Shown here: positions 55,846 to 64,000 of the stretch, in pieces
How the letters are laid out: each line of letters begins with the position of its first letter
How positions within the stretch are numbered: the stretch's first letter is position 1
Source of the DNA: Vitrella brassicaformis CCMP3155
Lineage: Eukaryota > Protista > Chromerida
Direction: 5' to 3'
Length of the DNA: 64,000 nucleotides
Assembly: GCA_001179505.1 (NCBI GenBank)
Contig: CDMY01000408.1
Span: 21,253 to 85,252 of the forward strand
The notes under the pieces: model-generated
Database searches by the model: none
What the model was told of the DNA's origin: nothing
What the model saw: only the letters and a program-made list of their open reading frames with translations
Program-made: the position numbers and the translations under genes

Positions 55846-58800
55846 GTGAGAGAGGACCGACCCCTCCCTGTCTCACTGAAGGCGCTACGGCTGCTCAACG
55901 CACGCCAGCACGCCCAAGTGAAAGTCGACAACCGCAGAATATTAATAATGCACAAAGGCATGCAGCAGGCAGACGGCCGAACAGGCGAACGGGCACTTGA
56001 CATGCAGGCCAAACAAATCACTAAGAAACTTGGTTGGATGGCACTGCCCATCCAACTCGCCTTTAGGCCTGATGGAATGGGCCGCCAGAAGGGGGCGTAC
56101 GATTTACTGCCCGACTGCATGTCCGGCGATCCATACACATACGAATTCCTAGCTTACAAGACACAAGCCTCATGCACAATATGACATGATTGACACCATA
56201 CTGTCTCACCGACGGCTTTACAAGCACTCAAGGCAAGACAGCCAACCCACGAAACACGACATCAGGAAAAGTGACAGGCACTTCACGAGCAGTCGAGAAG
56301 GCATGCGGGGCATCTGATTGGATGCCCCTCCCGACAGACAGGAGGACATGAAGTGGAAAAAATCACAGACAGCCGACAGAAGGCTTTGGCGGCACAACAC
56401 ATGTCATTCCCTGGCACCCACCCAGCTAAGCAAGGGACCAGATCATCCCCGTCTGTCGTGTAATTAAGTACCTTGACTGATCGTCCCTCATGAGATCACG
56501 CGCCCGCTCGAGAGCTTCCTCAATCACACGTCTCTCAGTGCTGCCCTTGTGAGCATACCGGCTGCGCGCATCTGCGGCCAGCTGATCGAGATGCGTCTGG
56601 ATGACATCGAGACGCCTCCCAAATTCCGCTGCGCTAGGTGGTGGTGAGCCGATGGAAGTATTGCTGTGCCCATTCTTGGCTCGGATGCAAATGAAGCCCA
56701 GGTCAGCCAGCATGTCGATCGACCGCTCCATGACGAAAAGGTCCTTCTGGCAGTAGAAACGCAGGCTGTGCATGCACAGGGCGAGCAGCTCCTCGAAAGA
56801 CCATGACCGCATTGCAACGTAGAGTCTCTGAAAATGGAAACACGCACACACGCACATACGTTCAGCATTGCATGACTGCTTTCCCCCCTCTTGTGCGCAC
56901 ACGTACCCCGCGGATTCTGACGAAGTGATGGTGGAGCTTGTTCCGCACGATGTCCTTGAAGAGCTCGCTGATGCGGTCGATAGCGCTGACTGCTGCATGG
57001 GGGTCGTTGACTGACGAAGTCATGACGCGGACGGCGATTTCCGTGATCTCACGAACTGACCGCAGATCGATGAAGAAGGCAAGAGTGCATGTAGCCAGCC
57101 GTCTCGTCTGGTGTGGTCTGTCTGTCCGGCTGGCTGGCCCACCTCCGAATGAGATGCTCTCGCCACCGCGATCTTCACAACTCACACGAAGGGCCCGGTT
57201 CACCATCCTTGTCACACGGTGTAACTGCTGTTTATTCACACGCTCGACACGCTTTACATCACTCGCACTCGCGACTGCCTGCAGACTTGAAGTGTCGACG
57301 TCGGGATGCACACGAACCCATGCCTAGGCACATCAAATAAAGGCATACGTGTGTGGTAGAAACGAGCAGAGCCACACTTCACTTACCAGGACTGTTCCTT
57401 CTGTGACAAATGTGCCCATCATGATGCGACGGTTGACGCACAGCTGGAGAGGGGGCCGCTCCTTCCGCAGCTGATGAGCCAGCCAATGTAAGTCGGCCGA
57501 GCAGATGTAGCCACTGCGCTTGGCGAGGATGATATCTCGATGTCCGAGAGCGAACTCGTCTAATGGTTCGATCTCATCGCTCTCTCGCGGCGGCTCGATG
57601 GTTTGCCGTTTGAAGGAAGTCGCACTCTTCTTGATCCATCCCGTGATCTCCATAACCCAATGACAAAACCCCTCCTCAACCGACCAATTGGCCTCGCGAA
57701 GTGACCGCTTGTTCTCCTGGACAATATTGCGAAGGATGTGCTGCAGATGAAGGCCGCACAGAAAGCTGAGGACACGAAGAACACATGGACAGGAAACCGT
57801 ATCTGCTTGGTATCACACGCCTGCATACTTGTGCATGAAGAAAACCAACAGCCACAAGAACAAGATGCTATCTGCAAAACAAAGGGCACGCAAACCTACT
57901 TGCGGCATTGCGTTTGTCCTCTCTGCTGCTGGTTGCTTACAGAGGCCCAGAACATTGACGGCCAACTCAGGTGTAAACGGATCTTCCTCCTGCTCGTCCG
58001 GAGCCTCGCCGCCGACGAAGAAGATGACAGTCATGCAATAGGCAAAGAAGCCAATGAAGACGCTGCACAGACACACAGGGACCGATAAAAATAAAAGGAC
58101 AAGTATATGAGAAGACCGGCCACTTTCTCTCTCTTCTGCCTGCCAATGAGGCCACTCACCTGAGGCAGCGGACATTCGCTGAGCTTCGCATGTAACTGTT
58201 CACCAGTCGAGGGGAGTAATTGGAAGCGAAGAGCTGCATGGCCAGGATGGTCACCGAGAATGTCAGCACCACCACGTTGATAGATGTCGACCCAAGCATG
58301 TTCAATAGCGCACGCGCACGGCTGACGTCCCGCGTGATCCACTTATACCCTTCCTTCCAGGTCTCCGTCTCGTGCCATCTCTGGTTGTCGCGCAAGAGTA
58401 GCGGGCCGGGGATGCTGGTGTCGTTGAGGCGCTCCAGAGTCAGCCTCAGAGCGATTGGTTGAGCAAGCTGCCTCTTATACCACCTCCAGTGATCATTGCG
58501 GCAGAGGGCGAAGGCGAGCATGACATTGAGAATAATCGATAACTGAAGGGACACCACAGGACACACGCAGCGAGGGATTCATCAAGTGAGGGGAGAAACA
58601 CCTGCCCAAACCTTCATTCGGCTTACGATGGGCCAGAGGAAGAAGCGCCGATAATGGTGTCGAAAGCGGTTGTCCGCACGCTGCACGAAAGTCATGAGGA
58701 AGAGAACACTGAACACGGCAACATAGCCCCAGAGAAGGTATTTGAAGGTTTTGGAACGAGGGTTCTCCTCCAGCTCAGCGGTGAGGGTGCTGTTGAATTG

Positions 58801-59133
58801 ACCGTCAGTCATCCATTCATCGAAGCCCGCCAGTGTGGGTCGATCAGAGGTGTTGTTGAGCGGCAGCTGGCTCATGCCGAACTGATAAATCTGAGAGCCA
58901 ACACGCGCTGAGAGAGGGGGACTCCATACAGCGGGGAAAGCGTGCAGCGGGGACTCCATCTCACATCACCAGCGGCAGCAGTGGACCGTTCCGGACATGC
59001 GCCTGCCAAGATCTCACGACAGTGCTCCGATCTCTCCATTTCGCTCTCTGCGGTATCAGGAATCTCATTCTCTGCTCTCCTCTCCGATCGCCGCATGGCT
59101 CGCAAGAGGGCGAGAGGAAAGAGATAGACGACA
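55846..59133. repeat. Segmental duplication, copy 1 (~3.3 kb)
   Basis: Colinear with 60716-63853, from GAGAGAGGACCGAC...CTGTCTCACTGAAGGCGCTAC to CGCAAGAGGGCGAGAGGAAAGAGATAGACGACA. Confidence 0.92.
56426..58959 (-). CDS. DUF2254-family predicted membrane protein, copy 1 (apparently intact, multi-exon)
   Basis: ARALLNMLGSTSINVVVLTFSVTILAMQLFASNYSPRL, VFIGFFAYCM, LVFFMHN, LAKRSGYI, TFVTEGT, SFG|VREITEIAVRVMTSSVNDPHAAVSAIDRI and SFEELLALCMHSLRFYC match recalled DUF2254 motifs. Confidence 0.8.
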
Positions 59134-59250
59134 GCATGTGTGCCTTCCTCCTGCCCCTTCTCTTTGTTGTTGCCCATCGACCTGCCGTCGACCGCACCCA
59201 GTTTTCGATTCGTCGGTGCATCTCTCTTTCTTGGTCAGCAGGGCCGTCCC

Positions 59251-59937
59251 ATGTCAAGGCTGACGGTGTTGGGCTGCCTCGCCCTGGCCATCTTGACTGT
59301 GTCGTCGGTAGGCGACTGTCTGTGGACACGCACCTGTGTCTGTGTCATGATGCCTGACTCTCCTGCTCAGGCCCCGTCTGGTTTGCGAGGCGAGAGTGGG
59401 CAGAACATGTTGAGCGGCACACAGGTGGTGCAGCCGGCTGATGTGGACTGTGGATCGTTCGACTGCGAGTTCGGCACTTGCCGGAAGGATTTGTCCCTGT
59501 TGAGCAACGAGGAGCGATCCACCTATTGTCAATCGCATGGGCCGTGCTTCCCTGATGGTCGTGAATTCCCTCTGCACTGTTTCGAGCCGTGCTTCAAGGA
59601 GGAGCTGGAGGCTCTCCGCGAGGCGTCGCAGAATGGCACTGGATCCGAAGGTGACGACAGAACGAGTAAGAGGGCGGACGTGTATTATGGTTGTTTCCTT
59701 CTTTCTGCTGCAGAAATCTTTGGTATCGAAGTGTACGATCTGTGTGCCCCTCGTCCTGAAGATGTCACTTTTCCTGGAGCTGGCATTCACTATGTCAGCT
59801 CGCCAAATGCAGCCGCAGGTGGCGCCGTAGGTAGCGCCATAGGTGGCGCACCCTCTTTCCACAGCCAGCCGCGTAACTTTGGCTTATCGAAATTCATGTG
59901 TTGGGTGACGAGTGGTTTCAAGTCTGGTGGGTGTTGA
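59251..59937 (+). CDS. Secreted cysteine-rich protein (2 exons)
   Basis: Signal peptide MSRLTVLGCLALAILTVSS|APS; mature part has about 11 Cys (CGSFDCEFGTC, CQSHGPC, CFEPC...); ends GGC* at 59937. Confidence 0.65.
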   Translation: MSRLTVLGCLALAILTVSSVGDCLWTRTCVCVMMPDSPAQAPSGLRGESGQNMLSGTQVVQPADVDCGSFDCEFGTCRKDLSLLSNEERSTYCQSHGPCFPDGREFPLHCFEPCFKEELEALREASQNGTGSEGDDRTSKRADVYYGCFLLSAAEIFGIEVYDLCAPRPEDVTFPGAGIHYVSSPNAAAGGAVGSAIGGAPSFHSQPRNFGLSKFMCWVTSGFKSGGC

Positions 59938-60715
59938 TAGATGGAATATCAGTAGCCAATTCGCCTCTTGCATGAGTCTGTCGTTCGTTTGGTTTTGATC
60001 CATTGCGTGTCTTGTCTGTCCCTCTGGGGGAGGGAACACTCAATCAGTGTGTCTCCTCAGGAGGGGTAATGCCACCAACCAATTGCATTATTCATGTCCT
60101 TTGCTTTGCCTGTGAGGCACCTCTTCGCCTGTCGCCAGAGAAAGTCAGATGTGTACTCAAAGTCGGTGGTGAGGCCTTTTGTTTTGGTGTGCGTCATATG
60201 TGCGCCCCGGCAGTTTCTTGGAATGTTGTGTGGCCATGCCATGCCTGCATATCGCTTGGCTCAGCGGGTTGTCAGCTATGAGACTTGTCCATGTGGACCG
60301 ACGCGTAGGGCCCCAATATATCATTTCACATCAAACTCATGTCCGAATCATGGAGAGGAGAAAGCAAGCCTTCATCCATCCGTCATGTTCATCCACACGT
60401 CAACACAGCCGTCCATCCACCTGTCCACCCATGCACCACGCCGATCAATTTCATTTGCCTGCACTGCGATCCGTCCGTCCATGCACTGCTGTGCATCATT
60501 CATTTCCCTGATCATGCGACGCAGCTCAGTTGTTTAAATCGTTTATGTAGTCATATGTCAAGGCATCCTCTTCACATTGTCAACACATGAAGAAGACACA
60601 GAATGCATGTCTGATGGACAAGAATACATGATGGCAGGGACGACAGTCAAGCTCTATCGATAGAACGCCTCCCCTCTCCTCCCACATTTCCCTTTCGTGC
60701 AATGCGTGATGCGCA

Positions 60716-63700
60716 TGAGAGAGGACCGACGCGTCGCTGTCTCACTGAAGGCGCTACAAGTGCTCAAGGCACGACAGCCCGCCCAAGTGAAAGTCGACAA
60801 TCGCAGTATATTAACAATATACAAAGGAAGGCAAAGACAGGCAGGCAGGCAGACGGCCGGACAGGCGAACGGGCACTTGACATGCAGGCCAAACAAATCG
60901 CTAAGAAACTTGGTTGGATGGCACTGGCCATCCAACTCGCCAATAGGCCTGATGGAATGGGCTGCCAGAAGGGGGTGTACGATTTACTGCCTGACTGCAT
61001 GTCCGGCGATCCATACACATACGAATTCCTAGCTTACAAGACACAAGCATCATGCACAATACGACATGATTGACATCATACTCTCTCACCGACGGCTTTA
61101 CAAGCACTCAAGGCACGACAGCCAACCCACGAAACACGACATCAGGAAAAGCGACAGGCACTTCACGAGCAGTCGAGAAGGCATGCAGGGCATCTGATTG
61201 GATGCCCCTCCCGACAGACAAGAGGACATGAAGTGGATAAAATCACAGACAGCAACGACAGAAGGCCGTGGCGATACAACATATGTCATTCCCTGGCACC
61301 CAGTCAGCTAAGCAAGCGAGATCATCCCCGACTGTCGTGGAATTAAATACCTTGACTGATCGTCCCTCATGAGATCGCGCGCCCGCTCGAGAGCTTCCTC
61401 AATCACACGTCTCTCAGTGCTACCCGCGTCAGCATATTGGCTGCGCGCATCTGCTGCCAGCTGATCGAGATGCGTCTGGATGATATTGAAACGCCTCCCA
61501 AATTCCGCTGCGCTTGGTGGTGGTGAGCCGATGGAAGTATTGCTGTGCCCATTCTTGGCTCGGATGCAAATGAAGCCGAGGTCAGCCAGCATGTCGATCG
61601 ACCGCTCCATGACGAAAAGGTCCTTCTGGCAGTAGAAACGCAGGCTGTGCATGCACAGGGCGAGCAGCTCCTCGAAAGACCATGAGCGCATTGCGACGTA
61701 GAGTCTCTGAAATACACATACACATACACGCACACCCACACACATACGCTAGCATTGCATGACTGCTTTTCCCCCTCTTGTGCAAACGTACCCCGCCGAT
61801 TCTGACGAAGTGATGGTGGAGCTTGTTGCGTACGATGTCCTTGAAGAGCTCGCTGATGCGGTCGATAGCGCTGACTGCTGCATGGGGGTCGTTGACTGAC
61901 GAAGTCATAACGCGAACGGCGATCTCCGTGATCTCACGAACTGACCGCATCGATAAAGAAGGCAAGAGTGCATGTAGCCAGCCGTCTCGTCTGGTATGGT
62001 CTGTCTGTCCGGCTGGCTGTCCGGCTGGCTGGCCCACCTCCGAATGAGATGCTCTCGCCACCGCGATCTTCCCTACTCACACGAAGGGCCCGGTTTACCA
62101 TCCTTGTCACACGGTGCAGCTGTTCTTCGCCTCTCATGTTACCGGAGCTAGCAACTGAAGTCGAACTCGAACTGTCGTTCTCGGGATGCACTCGAACCCA
62201 TGCCTGAGCACAAATACAGGGGTAGACGCATAACAGCGACGAGCAGAGCCACACTTCACTTACCAGGACGGTTCCCTCTGTGACAAACGTCCCCTTCATG
62301 ACACGACGGCTGACGCACAGCTGGAGAGGCGGCCGCTCCTTCCGCAGCTGATGAGCCAGCCAATGTAAGTCGGCCGAGCAGATGTAGCCACTGCGCTTGG
62401 CGAGGATGATATCTCGATGTCCGGGGGCAAACTCATCCAGTGGCTCGATCTCATCGCTCTCTCGCGGCGGCTCGATGGTTTGCCGTCTGAAGGAGGTCGC
62501 ACTCTTCTTGACCCATCCCGTGATCTCCATAATCCAATGACAAAACCCCTCCTCAACCGACCAATTGGCCTCGCGCAATGATCGCTTATTCTCCTGGACA
62601 ATGTTGCGAAGGATGTGCTGCAGATGAAGGCCGCACAGAAAGCTGAGGACACGAAGAACACATGGACAGGAAACCGTTTCTGCTTGGTATCACACGCCTG
62701 CGTACTTGTGCATGAAGAAAATCAACAGCCACAAGAACAAGATGCTATCTGCAAAGGACAGAACACGCAAACGTACTTGCGGCATTCCGTTTGTCGCCTC
62801 TACTGCTGGTTGCTTACAGAGGCCCAGGATATCGACGGCCCACTCAGGTGTAAACGGATCTTCCTCCTGCTCGCCTGGAGCCTCGCCGCCGACGAAGAAG
62901 ATGACAGTCATACAGTAGGCGAAGAAGCCGATGAAAATACTACACAGACACATACACAGACAACGAACAGCAAAGTGGGCCATCTCTTTTTTTTGGAATG
63001 CCCAGCATTTAGTCACTCACCTGAGGCAGCGGACGTTCGCTGAGCTTCGCATGTAACTGTTGACCAGTCGAGGGGAATAGTTGGATGCAAACAATTGCAG
63101 GGCCAAGATAGTCACCGAGAATGTCAGCACCACCACATTAATAGATGTCGACCCAAGCATGTTGAGTGAGAAGTGCACGCGCACGGCTGACGTCCCGAAT
63201 GATCCATTGGAAGCCTCCTTTCCACGTCGTATCTGGCAAGAGCAGTGACCGGCTCGTATCATTGAGGCGTTCCAATGTCAGCTCCACTGCGATGGGTTCG
63301 GCGACCTTCCTCTCGTACCACTTCCGATGGTCGTACTGACAGAGGGCGGAGGCGAGCAAGACACTGAGAATGATGGAGAAGAAGGGCCAGAGGAAGAAGC
63401 GGCGGTACTCGGGTAGGAAGACGTTGTCCGTCTGCACGAATGTCACGATGAAGAGGATGCAAAAGAAGGCGACATACCCCCACACCAAATAGTTAATGGT
63501 GGGCTCGAGAGGCTTCTCTGCTAGCGTAGTAGCAAGGCTGCTGTTGAATTGACCGTCAGTCATCCATTCGTTGAAGCCGACCAGCGTTGGTCGATCAGAG
63601 GTGCTGTTGAGCTGCAGTTGGCATGAGCTGAACTGATGAATCTGAGGGCCGGCAAGCGTACAGGTCTGCAGGTGCGTGGCGTACAGCGGGGACTCCATGT

Positions 63701-63853
63701 CGAGCATTAACAGCGGTAGGAGCTGCCGTTGCAGTTGAGGACCTGCGCCTGGCAAAATCTGCAAAGTCGGGTGACGACAGCGAGATGAGAGATCTCTCTG
63801 TGAGTGTCGCTCCCTAGCTCGCAAGAGGGCGAGAGGAAAGAGATAGACGACAT
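60716..63853. repeat. Segmental duplication, copy 2 (~3.1 kb)
   Basis: Colinear with 55846-59133, including the introns and the 3' flank. Confidence 0.92.
61308..63698 (-). pseudogene. DUF2254-family membrane protein, copy 2, carrying a 4-nt frameshift
   Basis: Same exons as copy 1, but GCA CTT CTC ACTC AAC ATG replaces GCG CTA TTG AAC ATG at 63164-63173 and leads to TAA at 63138-63140. The ORF track shows the split (63138..63824 and 63017..63262). Confidence 0.72.
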
Positions 63854-64000
63854 GTCAGAAGTGCAAGTCGGTCCAGGGTTTAGGGTCTAGGGTTCATAGA
63901 CCGACGATCCACTGATCTGTGAGACAGGACGGCTGTTGAGTCTTTGTCCGTTCCATGAGACAGGCCATGGCGGACAGGACGTCAGACAGAATGGACTGAC

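What the first reader, a model, noticed from the sequence alone, without database searches (positions are those of the whole stretch)
56426..63698. Intron-containing, tandem-duplicated DUF2254 genes: a mainly bacterial membrane family domesticated in an alga
Seen: two colinear genes with several spliceosomal introns whose proteins carry the DUF2254 motif series. Their shared exons differ by many synonymous changes (e.g. AAT/AAC, CGG/CGA, CTT/TTG in HILRNIVQENKRSLRE), consistent with purifying selection. Both add a ~150-aa N-terminal extension with N-x-S/T sequons (NNTS, NSTS, NDTS) and extra TM helices. Known: DUF2254 is a functionally uncharacterised, largely prokaryotic family. Inference: horizontal acquisition, then intron gain, N-terminal fusion and duplication into a small family of channel- or transporter-like proteins.
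Basis: partly seen in the sequence, partly recalled or inferred. Interest (0 to 1): 0.75.

Follow-up and report, generated by a model that had tools for sequence, protein, structure and literature searches.

The report
Expanded divergent DUF2254 membrane genes, Vitrella
Two neighbouring, intron-split genes of the alga Vitrella brassicaformis encode a divergent form of an uncharacterised membrane-protein family (DUF2254); they belong to a branch of that family seen so far only in eukaryotes, not to a fresh bacterial import, and one of the two copies is transcribed but broken by a frameshift.

Summary
The window is from Vitrella brassicaformis CCMP3155. Copy A (56426-58959, minus strand, 8 exons) is the public 663-aa protein P0039 and matches Pfam DUF2254 end to end (199 bits). 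Copy B (61308-63698) is colinear, lacks A's intron 1, and carries a 4-nt insertion near 63168-63171 that shifts the frame, with a stop at 63138-63140. A spliced cDNA contig carries the same insertion. A and B differ mostly at synonymous sites (dN/dS 0.24), but identity is mosaic, which points to gene conversion with a third paralogue.

The genome has at least six DUF2254 loci: one canonical gene (P0067) and five of an extended type with about 105 extra N-terminal residues and one extra membrane helix.

Direct bacterial transfer into this alga is not supported. In a maximum-likelihood tree all Vitrella proteins sit in a 100/100-supported group with choanoflagellate, ichthyosporean and thraustochytrid proteins, apart from all 36 sampled bacterial-type sequences.

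At least one intron gain is supported: A's 84-nt intron 1 has a 96% identical copy at an unrelated locus.

Function remains unknown. No solved structure matches, and a channel- or transporter-like role is a weak inference. The scan also noted the intron difference separately on this window (s1-227181).

The parts
56426..58959 (-). Copy A, an intact extended-type DUF2254 gene (public protein P0039, 663 aa). Exons: 58959-58627, 58542-58160, 58062-57941, 57871-57829, 57765-57387, 57323-57143, 57055-56907, 56827-56426 (stop TAG 56428-56426).
   Evidence: P0039 maps exactly onto the window with GT-AG borders. Two exon starts were corrected by hand for split codons. Pfam DUF2254 scores 199 bits.
58543..58626 (-). 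Intron 1 of copy A (84 nt, GTAAGC...TTCAG), specific to A among the extended-type paralogues.
   Evidence: The splice joint 58542/58627 is present in X1 and X6 contigs. The intron is absent from B, C545 and C812. In C328 the nearest intron lies 14 codons downstream. A 96% identical copy of exactly the intron lies at G000:C513:54229-54313.
61308..63698 (-). Copy B, colinear with A but frameshifted. Projected exons: 63698-63021 (A's exons 1 and 2 fused), 62939-62818, 62748-62706, 62642-62264, 62203-62038, 61940-61792, 61706-61308.
   Evidence: Borders were projected from the A/B alignment. Exon-wise DUF2254 hits. Spliced joints 62748/62818, 62642/62706, 62202/62263, 61940/62038 and 61706/61792.
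63168..63171 (-). Approximate site of a 4-nt insertion in B relative to A, in the codons for ...RARALL/NML... It gives a net +1 frameshift.
   Evidence: Exon 1+2 length is 678 nt in B against 716 nt in A. X6 contig 63021-63568 and X1 contig 63043-63374 match the assembly with 0 gaps and 0 mismatches.
63138..63140 (-). Premature stop (TAA) reached in B after the frameshift. The ORF starting at 63698 gives about 186 aa without the DUF2254 core.
   Evidence: ORF 63138..63824; sequence read; protein P0003.
55847..59133 (.). Duplicated unit 1: gene A plus about 580 nt of 3' flank and about 170 nt of 5' flank.
   Evidence: Self-blastn: 55847-58341 = 60716-63206 (88.8%); 58627-58899 = 63381-63650 (76%); 59098-59133 = 63817-63852 (100%).
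60716..63852 (.). Duplicated unit 2 (gene B plus flanks). The contig ends 148 nt further on, at window position 64000.
   Evidence: window = C408:21253-85252; P0039's contig length is 85,252.
58740..58959 (-). Predicted extracytoplasmic N-terminal tail of A (residues 1-73) with the NNTS and NST sequons. The added TM helix follows (residues about 71-95, encoded about 58675-58749).
   Evidence: AlphaFold2 helices. No Pfam hit for exon 1. The arginine-rich stretch after the helix, read by the positive-inside rule, gives the orientation (inference).

Best explanation
SHOWN:
- The locus holds two tandem paralogues of a Vitrella-specific, N-terminally extended branch of the DUF2254 family.
- That branch arose by duplication of a canonical eukaryote-type DUF2254 gene still present in the genome (P0067). 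It expanded to at least five loci: C408-A, C408-B, C545, C328 and C812.
- The paralogues have exchanged sequence by gene conversion.
- Copy A is intact. Its introns 1 and 2 are confirmed by spliced contigs.
- Copy B is transcribed and spliced but carries a frameshift.
- The Vitrella genes fall in a DUF2254 group whose named members are all eukaryotes (choanoflagellates, ichthyosporeans, thraustochytrids). They are therefore long-resident eukaryotic genes, not a recent bacterial import.
- A's intron 1 has a near-identical copy at an unrelated locus, and it is absent at that site in the other four extended-type paralogues.

INFERRED:
- B's frameshift is recent, because B shows no other decay.
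- A's intron 1 is a recent gain.
- The protein is a multi-pass membrane protein. An added reverse signal-anchor helix puts about 73 residues with N-glycosylation sequons, plus the enlarged TM1-TM2 loop, on the lumenal or outer side. The four-helix DUF2254 core follows, then a cytosolic module made of a beta-hybrid domain related to PYNP_C and a helical bundle.
- The family most likely acts as a small channel- or transporter-like protein, or a membrane sensor, regulated by its cytosolic module. A link to ion or osmotic homeostasis is possible. I put this functional reading at about 0.3.
- The extended type has replaced several of the family's most conserved cytosolic residues, so it probably does something modified.
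For: Identity:
- Exon-wise and full-length Pfam hits.
- Organism and public protein.

Gene models and expression:
- Exact exon map and spliced joints in cDNA-type contigs.

Copy B:
- Frameshift, present in a spliced contig.
- dN/dS 0.24, with no stop in the A-frame codon alignment, which steps over the 4-nt insertion.
- Polarised replacements: 3 on A, 3 on B, 15 ambiguous.

Family size and mosaic:
- Six loci.
- A's exon 2 is 92.7% identical to C545 but 80.2% to B. Exons 5 and 8 are 93-95% identical to B but 81-82% to C545.

Phylogeny:
- Profile score gap of 310 to 242 bits between the eukaryote-type and bacterial-type hits.
- Eukaryotic names and contexts.
- Careful IQ-TREE: eukaryote-type versus bacterial-type 100/100, P0067 plus extended type 99/95, extended type 100/100 on a stem of 1.17.
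- Only 3 bacterial loci in 185,579 species genomes carry the eukaryote-type motifs, at 28-39% identity.
- Six of A's seven intron positions are shared with C328, and one is shared with P0067.

Intron 1:
-.

Architecture:
- AlphaFold2 model, pLDDT 80, pTM 0.76.
- PYNP_C similarity, E 7e-6 to 4ga4, and Atlas structure rows.
- Replaced conserved positions R471D, D476S, ALSPG to VMTSS, T501A and R533Y, all retained in P0067.

Function hint:
- MscS-type channel genes lie within a few genes of bacterial DUF2254 genes in Leifsonia (adjacent), one actinobacterial metagenome contig (4 genes away) and Caldimonas (one gene between). YetF/DUF421 neighbours occur in 2 loci and Na+/H+ exchanger neighbours in 2.
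Against: - The tree is unrooted, and bacterial sampling came from word-index and single-exon searches. An unsampled bacterial lineage inside the eukaryote-type group cannot be excluded.
- Most eukaryote-type rows are unnamed metagenomic proteins, labelled eukaryotic only by their clade. Two were checked by context.
- Within the group the branching does not follow the species tree. Ichthyosporeans sit with thraustochytrids and apart from choanoflagellates, so transfer between eukaryotes or hidden paralogy is involved.
- RNA evidence is from assembled contigs of runs whose type is not on record. A's introns 3-4, though inside the stretch laid, gave no joint (depth there is low), and introns 5-7 lay outside it.
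- B's frameshift was seen only in runs that may be the same strain.
- Function: no solved structure matches. The neighbour evidence comes from 7 bacterial proteins looked up (8 loci shown), partly syntenic, at about 25% identity to the Vitrella proteins. Other loci sit in pur or nad operons.
Confidence: 0.72

Rival explanations
1. A bacterial DUF2254 gene was transferred directly into the Vitrella lineage and then acquired introns, an N-terminal fusion and duplicates.
For: The family is overwhelmingly prokaryotic. The nearest large ESM Atlas clusters are 99-100% bacterial, and Pfam control genomes with hits are Corynebacterium and Haloferax. Known eukaryotic occurrences are patchy.
Against: No bacterial sequence groups with Vitrella. 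All Vitrella proteins share a 100/100 branch with holozoan and stramenopile proteins. The canonical Vitrella gene is 41-42% identical to a choanoflagellate protein over the tree's columns, while bacterial proteins are 19-27% identical to copy A. The best bacterial loci carrying the eukaryote-type motifs reach only 28-39% identity.
Confidence: 0.07
2. The Vitrella lineage obtained the eukaryote-type gene from another marine protist (eukaryote-to-eukaryote transfer), not by vertical descent from an early eukaryote.
For: Among named eukaryotes, hits came only from Holozoa, Labyrinthulomycetes and Vitrella. No other alveolate was returned although EukProt and MMETSP are in the database. Branching inside the group conflicts with the species tree: ichthyosporeans group with thraustochytrids at 99/98.
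Against: Vitrella is sister to all other eukaryote-type sequences, not nested in a donor lineage. The search is word-limited, so absence elsewhere is not shown. The intron position shared between the canonical and extended types shows long residence.
Confidence: 0.25
3. Copy B is functional despite the frameshift. The shift could be a strain-specific or assembly variant, or be bypassed, or B could make a useful truncated N-terminal product.
For: B is transcribed and correctly spliced at five introns. It shows dN/dS 0.05-0.39 against A, with no stop in the A-frame codon alignment and no excess of derived replacements.
Against: The insertion is present in DNA-type (X3) and spliced RNA-type (X1, X6) contigs with no indel variant reported. 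No AG dinucleotide nearby could give a corrective splice. The downstream frame would lack TM1.
Confidence: 0.15
4. The DUF2254 signal is bacterial contamination or a chance match.
For: None beyond the family's prokaryotic bias.
Against: Seven spliceosomal introns, spliced transcripts, six loci on five contigs of the assembly, a neighbouring spliced eukaryotic gene, and a full-length Pfam match at 199 bits.
Confidence: 0.01

Closest known systems
Pfam PF10011 / InterPro IPR018723, DUF2254 'predicted membrane protein' (bacteria and archaea, about 400-460 aa)
   Same: Full-length profile match. Four-helix membrane core with conserved F206, S207, T209, P222, R223 and P270. A beta-hybrid domain with G379 and G411, the N-D-P motif, and a C-terminal helical bundle.
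   Different: About 105 extra N-terminal residues with one more TM helix. An insertion of about 40 residues in the TM1-TM2 loop and further inserts after TM4. Replacement of conserved R471, D476, the A-L-S-P-G stretch, T501 and R533. Spliceosomal introns. 663 aa.
Eukaryote-type DUF2254 proteins: Vitrella CEM01181.1 (P0067), Sphaeroforma arctica SARC_08975 (XP_014152507.1), Creolimax CFRG7279T1, Hondaea fermentalgiana FCC1311_014542, Choanoeca perplexa and Salpingoeca kvevrii transcripts
   Same: Same 100/100-supported group. Shared 'RLESIL'-type helix after TM4 and the Y-C pair in TM3. P0067 is the sister of the window's type.
   Different: The canonical proteins have no added N-terminal TM and keep the family's cytosolic motif. 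The window's type sits on a stem of 1.17 substitutions per site and is known only from Vitrella.
PYNP_C, the C-terminal domain of pyrimidine-nucleoside and AMP phosphorylases (PDB 4ga4, 4ga5)
   Same: The family profile matches this domain at E 7e-6. ESM Atlas structure rows list PYNP_C clusters for residues about 320-590.
   Different: Only this small beta-rich domain is shared. The catalytic Glycos_transf_3 domains are absent, so the 2012 neighbour-based guess of guanosine phosphorylase (PMC3377989) is unlikely to describe the activity.
Introner elements and intron transposition (near-identical introns in unrelated genes of some algae, fungi and protists; from my own knowledge of that literature)
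   Same: A's 84-nt intron 1 is 96% identical, border to border, to a segment at an unrelated locus, and is missing from sister paralogues.
   Different: Only two copies were found and I saw no target-site duplication. Whether the second copy is spliced is untested.

Membership tests
DUF2254 (PF10011) | Profile HMM match above the gathering score over most of the model | tested here: met
   Copy A (P0039): 199.2 bits against a cut-off of 28.8, profile 5-367 of 368. Copy B: colinear exon-wise hits, two of them above the cut-off (38.2 and 33.6 bits).
DUF2254 (PF10011) | N-terminal four-helix membrane core followed by a soluble beta plus helical module | tested here: met
   AlphaFold2 model with pLDDT 80. 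Helices 108-151, 184-219, 232-254 and 271-299; strands 371-425; helical bundle to residue 662; plus one extra helix at 71-95. ESM Atlas TM-score 0.63/0.77 to a bacterial DUF2254 cluster.
DUF2254 (PF10011) | Most conserved residues of the family, defined as at least 80% conserved across 81 other sequences | tested here: inconclusive
   The membrane-core and beta-domain residues and N-D-P are kept. About 14 of the 38 conserved positions listed are replaced in A. The replacements include R471D, D476S, ALSPG to VMTSS, T501A and R533Y. The canonical P0067 keeps those cytosolic-motif residues.
DUF2254 (PF10011) | Intact reading frame (copy B) | tested here: not met
   Net +1 frameshift near 63168-63171 and a stop at 63138-63140, carried by transcript-type contigs.
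Eukaryote-type DUF2254 group (defined here, not a curated family) | Falls on the eukaryotic side of the split from bacterial-type sequences | tested here: met
   Ultrafast bootstrap 100 and SH-aLRT 100, 26 versus 36 rows. Same split with 97 rows.
Recent bacterium-to-alga horizontal transfer | Recipient's gene nested within, or sister to, a bacterial donor lineage to the exclusion of other eukaryotes | tested here: not met
Introner-like intron gain | Intron present in one paralogue only, with a near-identical sequence at unrelated loci | tested here: met
   Present in A only. A 96% identical copy lies at C513:54229-54313 with unrelated flanks.
Introner-like intron gain | Multi-copy family, with terminal repeats or target-site duplications | tested here: not met
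   Two copies found, which is a lower bound. No duplication is evident at the borders.
Ion channel or transporter | Demonstrated conductance or transport, or fold match to a known channel or transporter | tested here: not met
   Foldseek against PDB: no match at E <= 0.001. VIA-align: only generic designed helical repeats, Z up to 13. Activity is not testable with these tools.

The most novel reading that the evidence does not exclude
Two linked readings. First, DUF2254 has a previously undescribed eukaryote-only branch, patchily spread among marine protists (choanoflagellates, ichthyosporeans, labyrinthulomycetes, a chromerid). In Vitrella it gave rise to a new five-helix, probably N-glycosylated endomembrane or surface protein family with a remodelled cytosolic site. 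Second, copy A records a very recent intron gain by copying of an 84-nt intron-sized element that also sits in an unrelated gene. That would be a two-copy snapshot of intron transposition in an alveolate.
Probability: 0.45. Interest if true: 0.6.

Novelty: new variant of a known kind. Interest (0 to 1): 0.4.

Why it matters
DUF2254 is a large family with no function, no structure and almost no literature. Only four papers in the library mention it, and neither of the two that I read deals with eukaryotes.

- A distinct eukaryotic branch gives comparative handles. Some cytosolic residues are kept everywhere, and the Vitrella extended type has replaced them.
- The branch is a clean test case for how prokaryote-typical membrane proteins persist or spread among protists.
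- The locus also shows several genome-evolution processes side by side: tandem duplication, gene conversion among dispersed paralogues, a fresh frameshift in a still-transcribed copy, and a probable recent intron gain with an identifiable second copy.

None of this changes a major paradigm, and copy A is already in public databases as an unnamed DUF2254 protein.

Tried and rejected
- Word-index protein searches with P0002 and with an alignment containing low-complexity tails returned almost nothing useful. A trimmed alignment worked.
- Foldseek against PDB gave no hit at E <= 0.001.
- VIA-align over 48,161 chains gave only designed helical-repeat proteins, which is the expected background for helical models. 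The model has 663 residues and its domains were not searched alone.
- Pfam on the N-terminal extension exons and on the gene between the copies gave no family. The ORFs around the second intron copy also gave none.
- The weak DUF6415 hits at the C-terminus are below cut-off and were ignored.
- The pattern scan of 185,579 prokaryotic species genomes found only 3 weak loci. It found no donor candidate.
- The guanosine phosphorylase prediction for DUF2254 (PMC3377989) was rejected as an activity. Only a PYNP_C-like domain is shared. The prediction probably reflects placement in actinobacterial pur operons.
- One block ('E2post') used a wrong frame for B and is discarded.
- The odd joints 62116/62239, 62116/62263 and 62071/62142 were not interpreted. 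They may be cross-paralogue chimeras or minor isoforms.
B was searched exon by exon by reference, and A through its public protein id.

Full report
**What is there.** The window is G000:C408:21253-85252 of a 72.7-Mb, 1064-contig assembly. Public proteins identical to its products are named Vitrella brassicaformis CCMP3155.

On the minus strand, six ORF pieces per copy hit Pfam PF10011 (DUF2254) in colinear order. Copy A is the public 663-aa protein P0039. Mapping it back gives eight exons:
- 58959-58627
- 58542-58160
- 58062-57941
- 57871-57829
- 57765-57387
- 57323-57143
- 57055-56907
- 56827-56426

The seven GT-AG introns are 63-97 nt long (two borders adjusted by hand for split codons). P0039 matches the whole DUF2254 profile (199 bits, positions 5-367 of 368, residues 107-571).

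A self-comparison shows a tandem segmental duplication: 55847-59133 against 60716-63852. The contig ends 148 nt beyond the second unit, so the array may continue.

**Copy B is not intact.** B (63698-61308) is colinear with A and lacks A's intron 1 precisely. Relative to A it has in-frame gaps of 15, 6 and 21 nt. It also has a 4-nt insertion in the codons for ...RARALL/NML..., near 63168-63171. This shifts the frame and leads to a TAA at 63138-63140.

Contigs of four public runs were laid on 57700-63699.
- X3 is colinear with the genome, as DNA would be.
- X1, X2 and X6 carry joints that skip exactly the predicted introns, with CT..AC on the plus strand. That makes them cDNA in practice, although their type is not on record.
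- Confirmed joints are A intron 1 (58543-58626), A intron 2 (58063-58159), and B introns 3-7 (62749-62817, 62643-62705, 62203-62262 or one base on, 61941-62037, 61707-61791).
- An X6 contig that starts exactly at B's exon-2 border (63021) runs to 63568 with no mismatch or gap. An X1 contig spans 63043-63374 likewise.

The insertion is therefore in the transcripts and is not an assembly slip. These runs may be the same strain as the assembly. B is thus a transcribed, spliced, frameshifted copy.

**Selection and mosaicism.** The codon comparison was made exon by exon in a script. It gives dS 0.36, dN 0.087 and dN/dS 0.24, with per-exon values of 0.05-0.39. The codons were laid in A's frame, which steps over B's 4-nt insertion, and no B codon read that way is a stop.

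Introns and the 3' flank are about as diverged as synonymous sites.

Replacements polarised with C545 and C812 as outgroups fall 3 on A, 3 on B and 15 ambiguous (the mis-framed first block is discarded). B shows no decay beyond the frameshift, so the frameshift is probably recent.

Divergence is strongly regional. Nucleotide identity:

| Exon of A | to copy B | to paralogue C545 |
|---|---|---|
| Exon 2 | 80.2% | 92.7% |
| Exons 5 and 8 | 93-95% | 81-82% |

That pattern indicates gene conversion among dispersed paralogues. No single duplication date can be read from dS.

**Family in the genome.** Six-frame searches find DUF2254 exons on C305, C545, C328, C408 (twice) and C812.
- C328 encodes P0002 (663 aa, about 15 exons).
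- C812 matches P0044 at 95-98% identity, and P0044's 90% cluster includes an MMETSP transcript.
- C305 encodes the canonical P0067 (CEM01181.1), which lacks the N-terminal extension in the part that is modelled.
- Six of A's seven intron positions are shared with C328, and one (after ...TEGTVL) with P0067.

The introns therefore largely predate the expansion.

**Origin.** An exhaustive HMMER search with exon 2 and a profile search with a trimmed alignment recover a high-scoring set (310-780 bits). A gap separates it from bacterial-type proteins (242 bits or less).

Named members of the high set are:
- Creolimax fragrantissima and Sphaeroforma arctica
- Choanoeca perplexa and Salpingoeca kvevrii
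- Hondaea fermentalgiana
- two MMETSP transcriptomes
- the Vitrella proteins

Two unnamed members lie on long metagenomic contigs beside a cyclin gene and an eIF2A gene.

IQ-TREE (LG+C20+F+G4 PMSF) with 97 rows (quick search) and with 62 rows (careful search) gives these results:
- The 26 eukaryote-type rows separate from the 36 bacterial-type rows at 100/100.
- P0067 joins the extended type at 99/95.
- The extended type is supported at 100/100 on a stem of 1.17 substitutions per site.

A motif scan of 185,579 prokaryotic species genomes found only three loci, at 28-39% identity.

The Vitrella genes are members of a eukaryotic branch, not a direct bacterial import.

The tree is unrooted, and most rows are unnamed and labelled only by clade. 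Inside the group ichthyosporeans join thraustochytrids, not choanoflagellates. Transfer between eukaryotes or hidden paralogy is therefore likely somewhere, and an ancient bacterial source of the whole branch remains possible.

**Intron gain.** A's intron 1 is absent at that site in B, C545 and C812. C328's nearest intron is 14 codons away.

The 84 nt, from GTAAGC to TTCAG, recur at 96% identity at C513:54229-54313. The flanks there are unrelated, and the copy sits inside a 199-codon open frame with no Pfam hit. This supports a recent gain by copying of an intron-sized element.

Only two copies were found, and splicing of the second is untested. The scan's note s1-227181 flagged the presence/absence, and I confirm it. 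Another note (s1-227074) reports an introner-like intron elsewhere in this genome, which I did not test.

**Architecture and likely mechanism.** AlphaFold2 with an 84-sequence alignment gives pLDDT 80 and pTM 0.76.
- Residues 1-44 are disordered.
- The added helix is 71-95.
- The core helices are 108-151, 184-219, 232-254 and 271-299.
- A beta-rich domain spans 371-425.
- A helical bundle runs to residue 662.

The arginine-rich segment after the added helix, the acidic TM3-TM4 loop and the basic segment after TM4 give the topology by the positive-inside rule (established knowledge, applied by me). They place the N-terminal tail and the TM1-TM2 loop outside and the C-terminal module in the cytosol. 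This fits a protein of the secretory pathway (inference).

The family profile matches the PYNP_C domain of AMP/thymidine phosphorylase structures (4ga4, E 7e-6). No solved structure matches the whole protein.

The literature offers two items. One is a knot analysis of AlphaFold models (PMC11184937). The other is a 2012 neighbour-based guess of guanosine phosphorylase (PMC3377989). I consider that guess unlikely because the catalytic domains are absent.

For seven bacterial proteins I looked up the genomic neighbourhood; eight loci were shown:
- Three have an MscS-type channel gene nearby: adjacent in Leifsonia, one gene away in Caldimonas, four genes away in one actinobacterial contig. The two actinobacterial loci are syntenic.
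- Two have YetF/DUF421 next door.
- Two have a Na+/H+ exchanger nearby.
- Others lie in pur or nad operons.

I therefore favour, at about 0.3, a small channel- or transporter-like protein, or a membrane sensor, with a cytosolic regulatory module.

The extended type has replaced several near-universal cytosolic residues that P0067 retains: R471D, D476S, ALSPG to VMTSS, T501A and R533Y. It has probably diverged in function.

**Verdict.** Three corrections apply: B is frameshifted, the extension is about 105 aa with one extra helix, and A/B identity is a conversion mosaic. Duplication, N-terminal addition, purifying selection and one intron gain are supported. Direct bacterial transfer is not. 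The genes are a new, divergent variant of a known but uncharacterised family. Interest is moderate.

Noticed in passing
window 59117-60292 (+): A spliced plus-strand gene lies between the two DUF2254 copies. Its exons are 59117-59306, 59370-59648 and 59712-60292, with two 63-nt GT..AG introns. Contig depth there is higher than over the DUF2254 genes, though contig depth is a poor measure of expression. The product is cysteine-rich with a hydrophobic N-terminal stretch and has no Pfam hit. It is not part of the duplicated unit.
   Followed up: partly
L036 about 1000-1084 (G000:C513:54229-54313, minus strand): A 96% identical copy of copy A's 84-nt intron 1 lies here, with unrelated flanks, inside a 199-codon open frame that has no Pfam hit. 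It is a candidate source or sister of a recent intron gain.
   Followed up: partly
window 58160-58542 versus L015 1750-2130 (G000:C545): Exon 2 of copy A is 92.7% identical to the paralogue on contig C545 but only 80.2% to its tandem neighbour B. Exons 5 and 8 show the reverse pattern. This indicates gene conversion between dispersed paralogues.
   Followed up: yes
window 64000 (= end of contig C408): The contig stops 148 nt beyond the second duplicated unit. Reads-derived contigs join 63699 back to 59098 through the shared 36-nt upstream block. The tandem array may be longer than assembled.
   Followed up: no
L025, L026, L028-L032 (bacterial loci): Bacterial DUF2254 genes recur near MscS-type channel genes, YetF/DUF421 genes and Na+/H+ exchanger genes. 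In actinobacteria they sit inside the pur operon, and in one genome between nadA and nadC.
   Followed up: partly
window 62071-62142 and 62116-62263 (copy B exon 6 region): Extra joints appear in single contigs: one 70-nt CT..AC skip and two non-canonical skips. They may be minor isoforms or chimeras between paralogues.
   Followed up: no
L010 and L011/L012 (metagenomic contigs): Intron-poor eukaryote-type DUF2254 genes lie on long metagenomic contigs (943 kb and about 81-83 kb) beside cyclin, sulfatase, eIF2A and TIR-NPHP3-WD40 genes. They are probably from uncultured marine heterotrophic protists.
   Followed up: no
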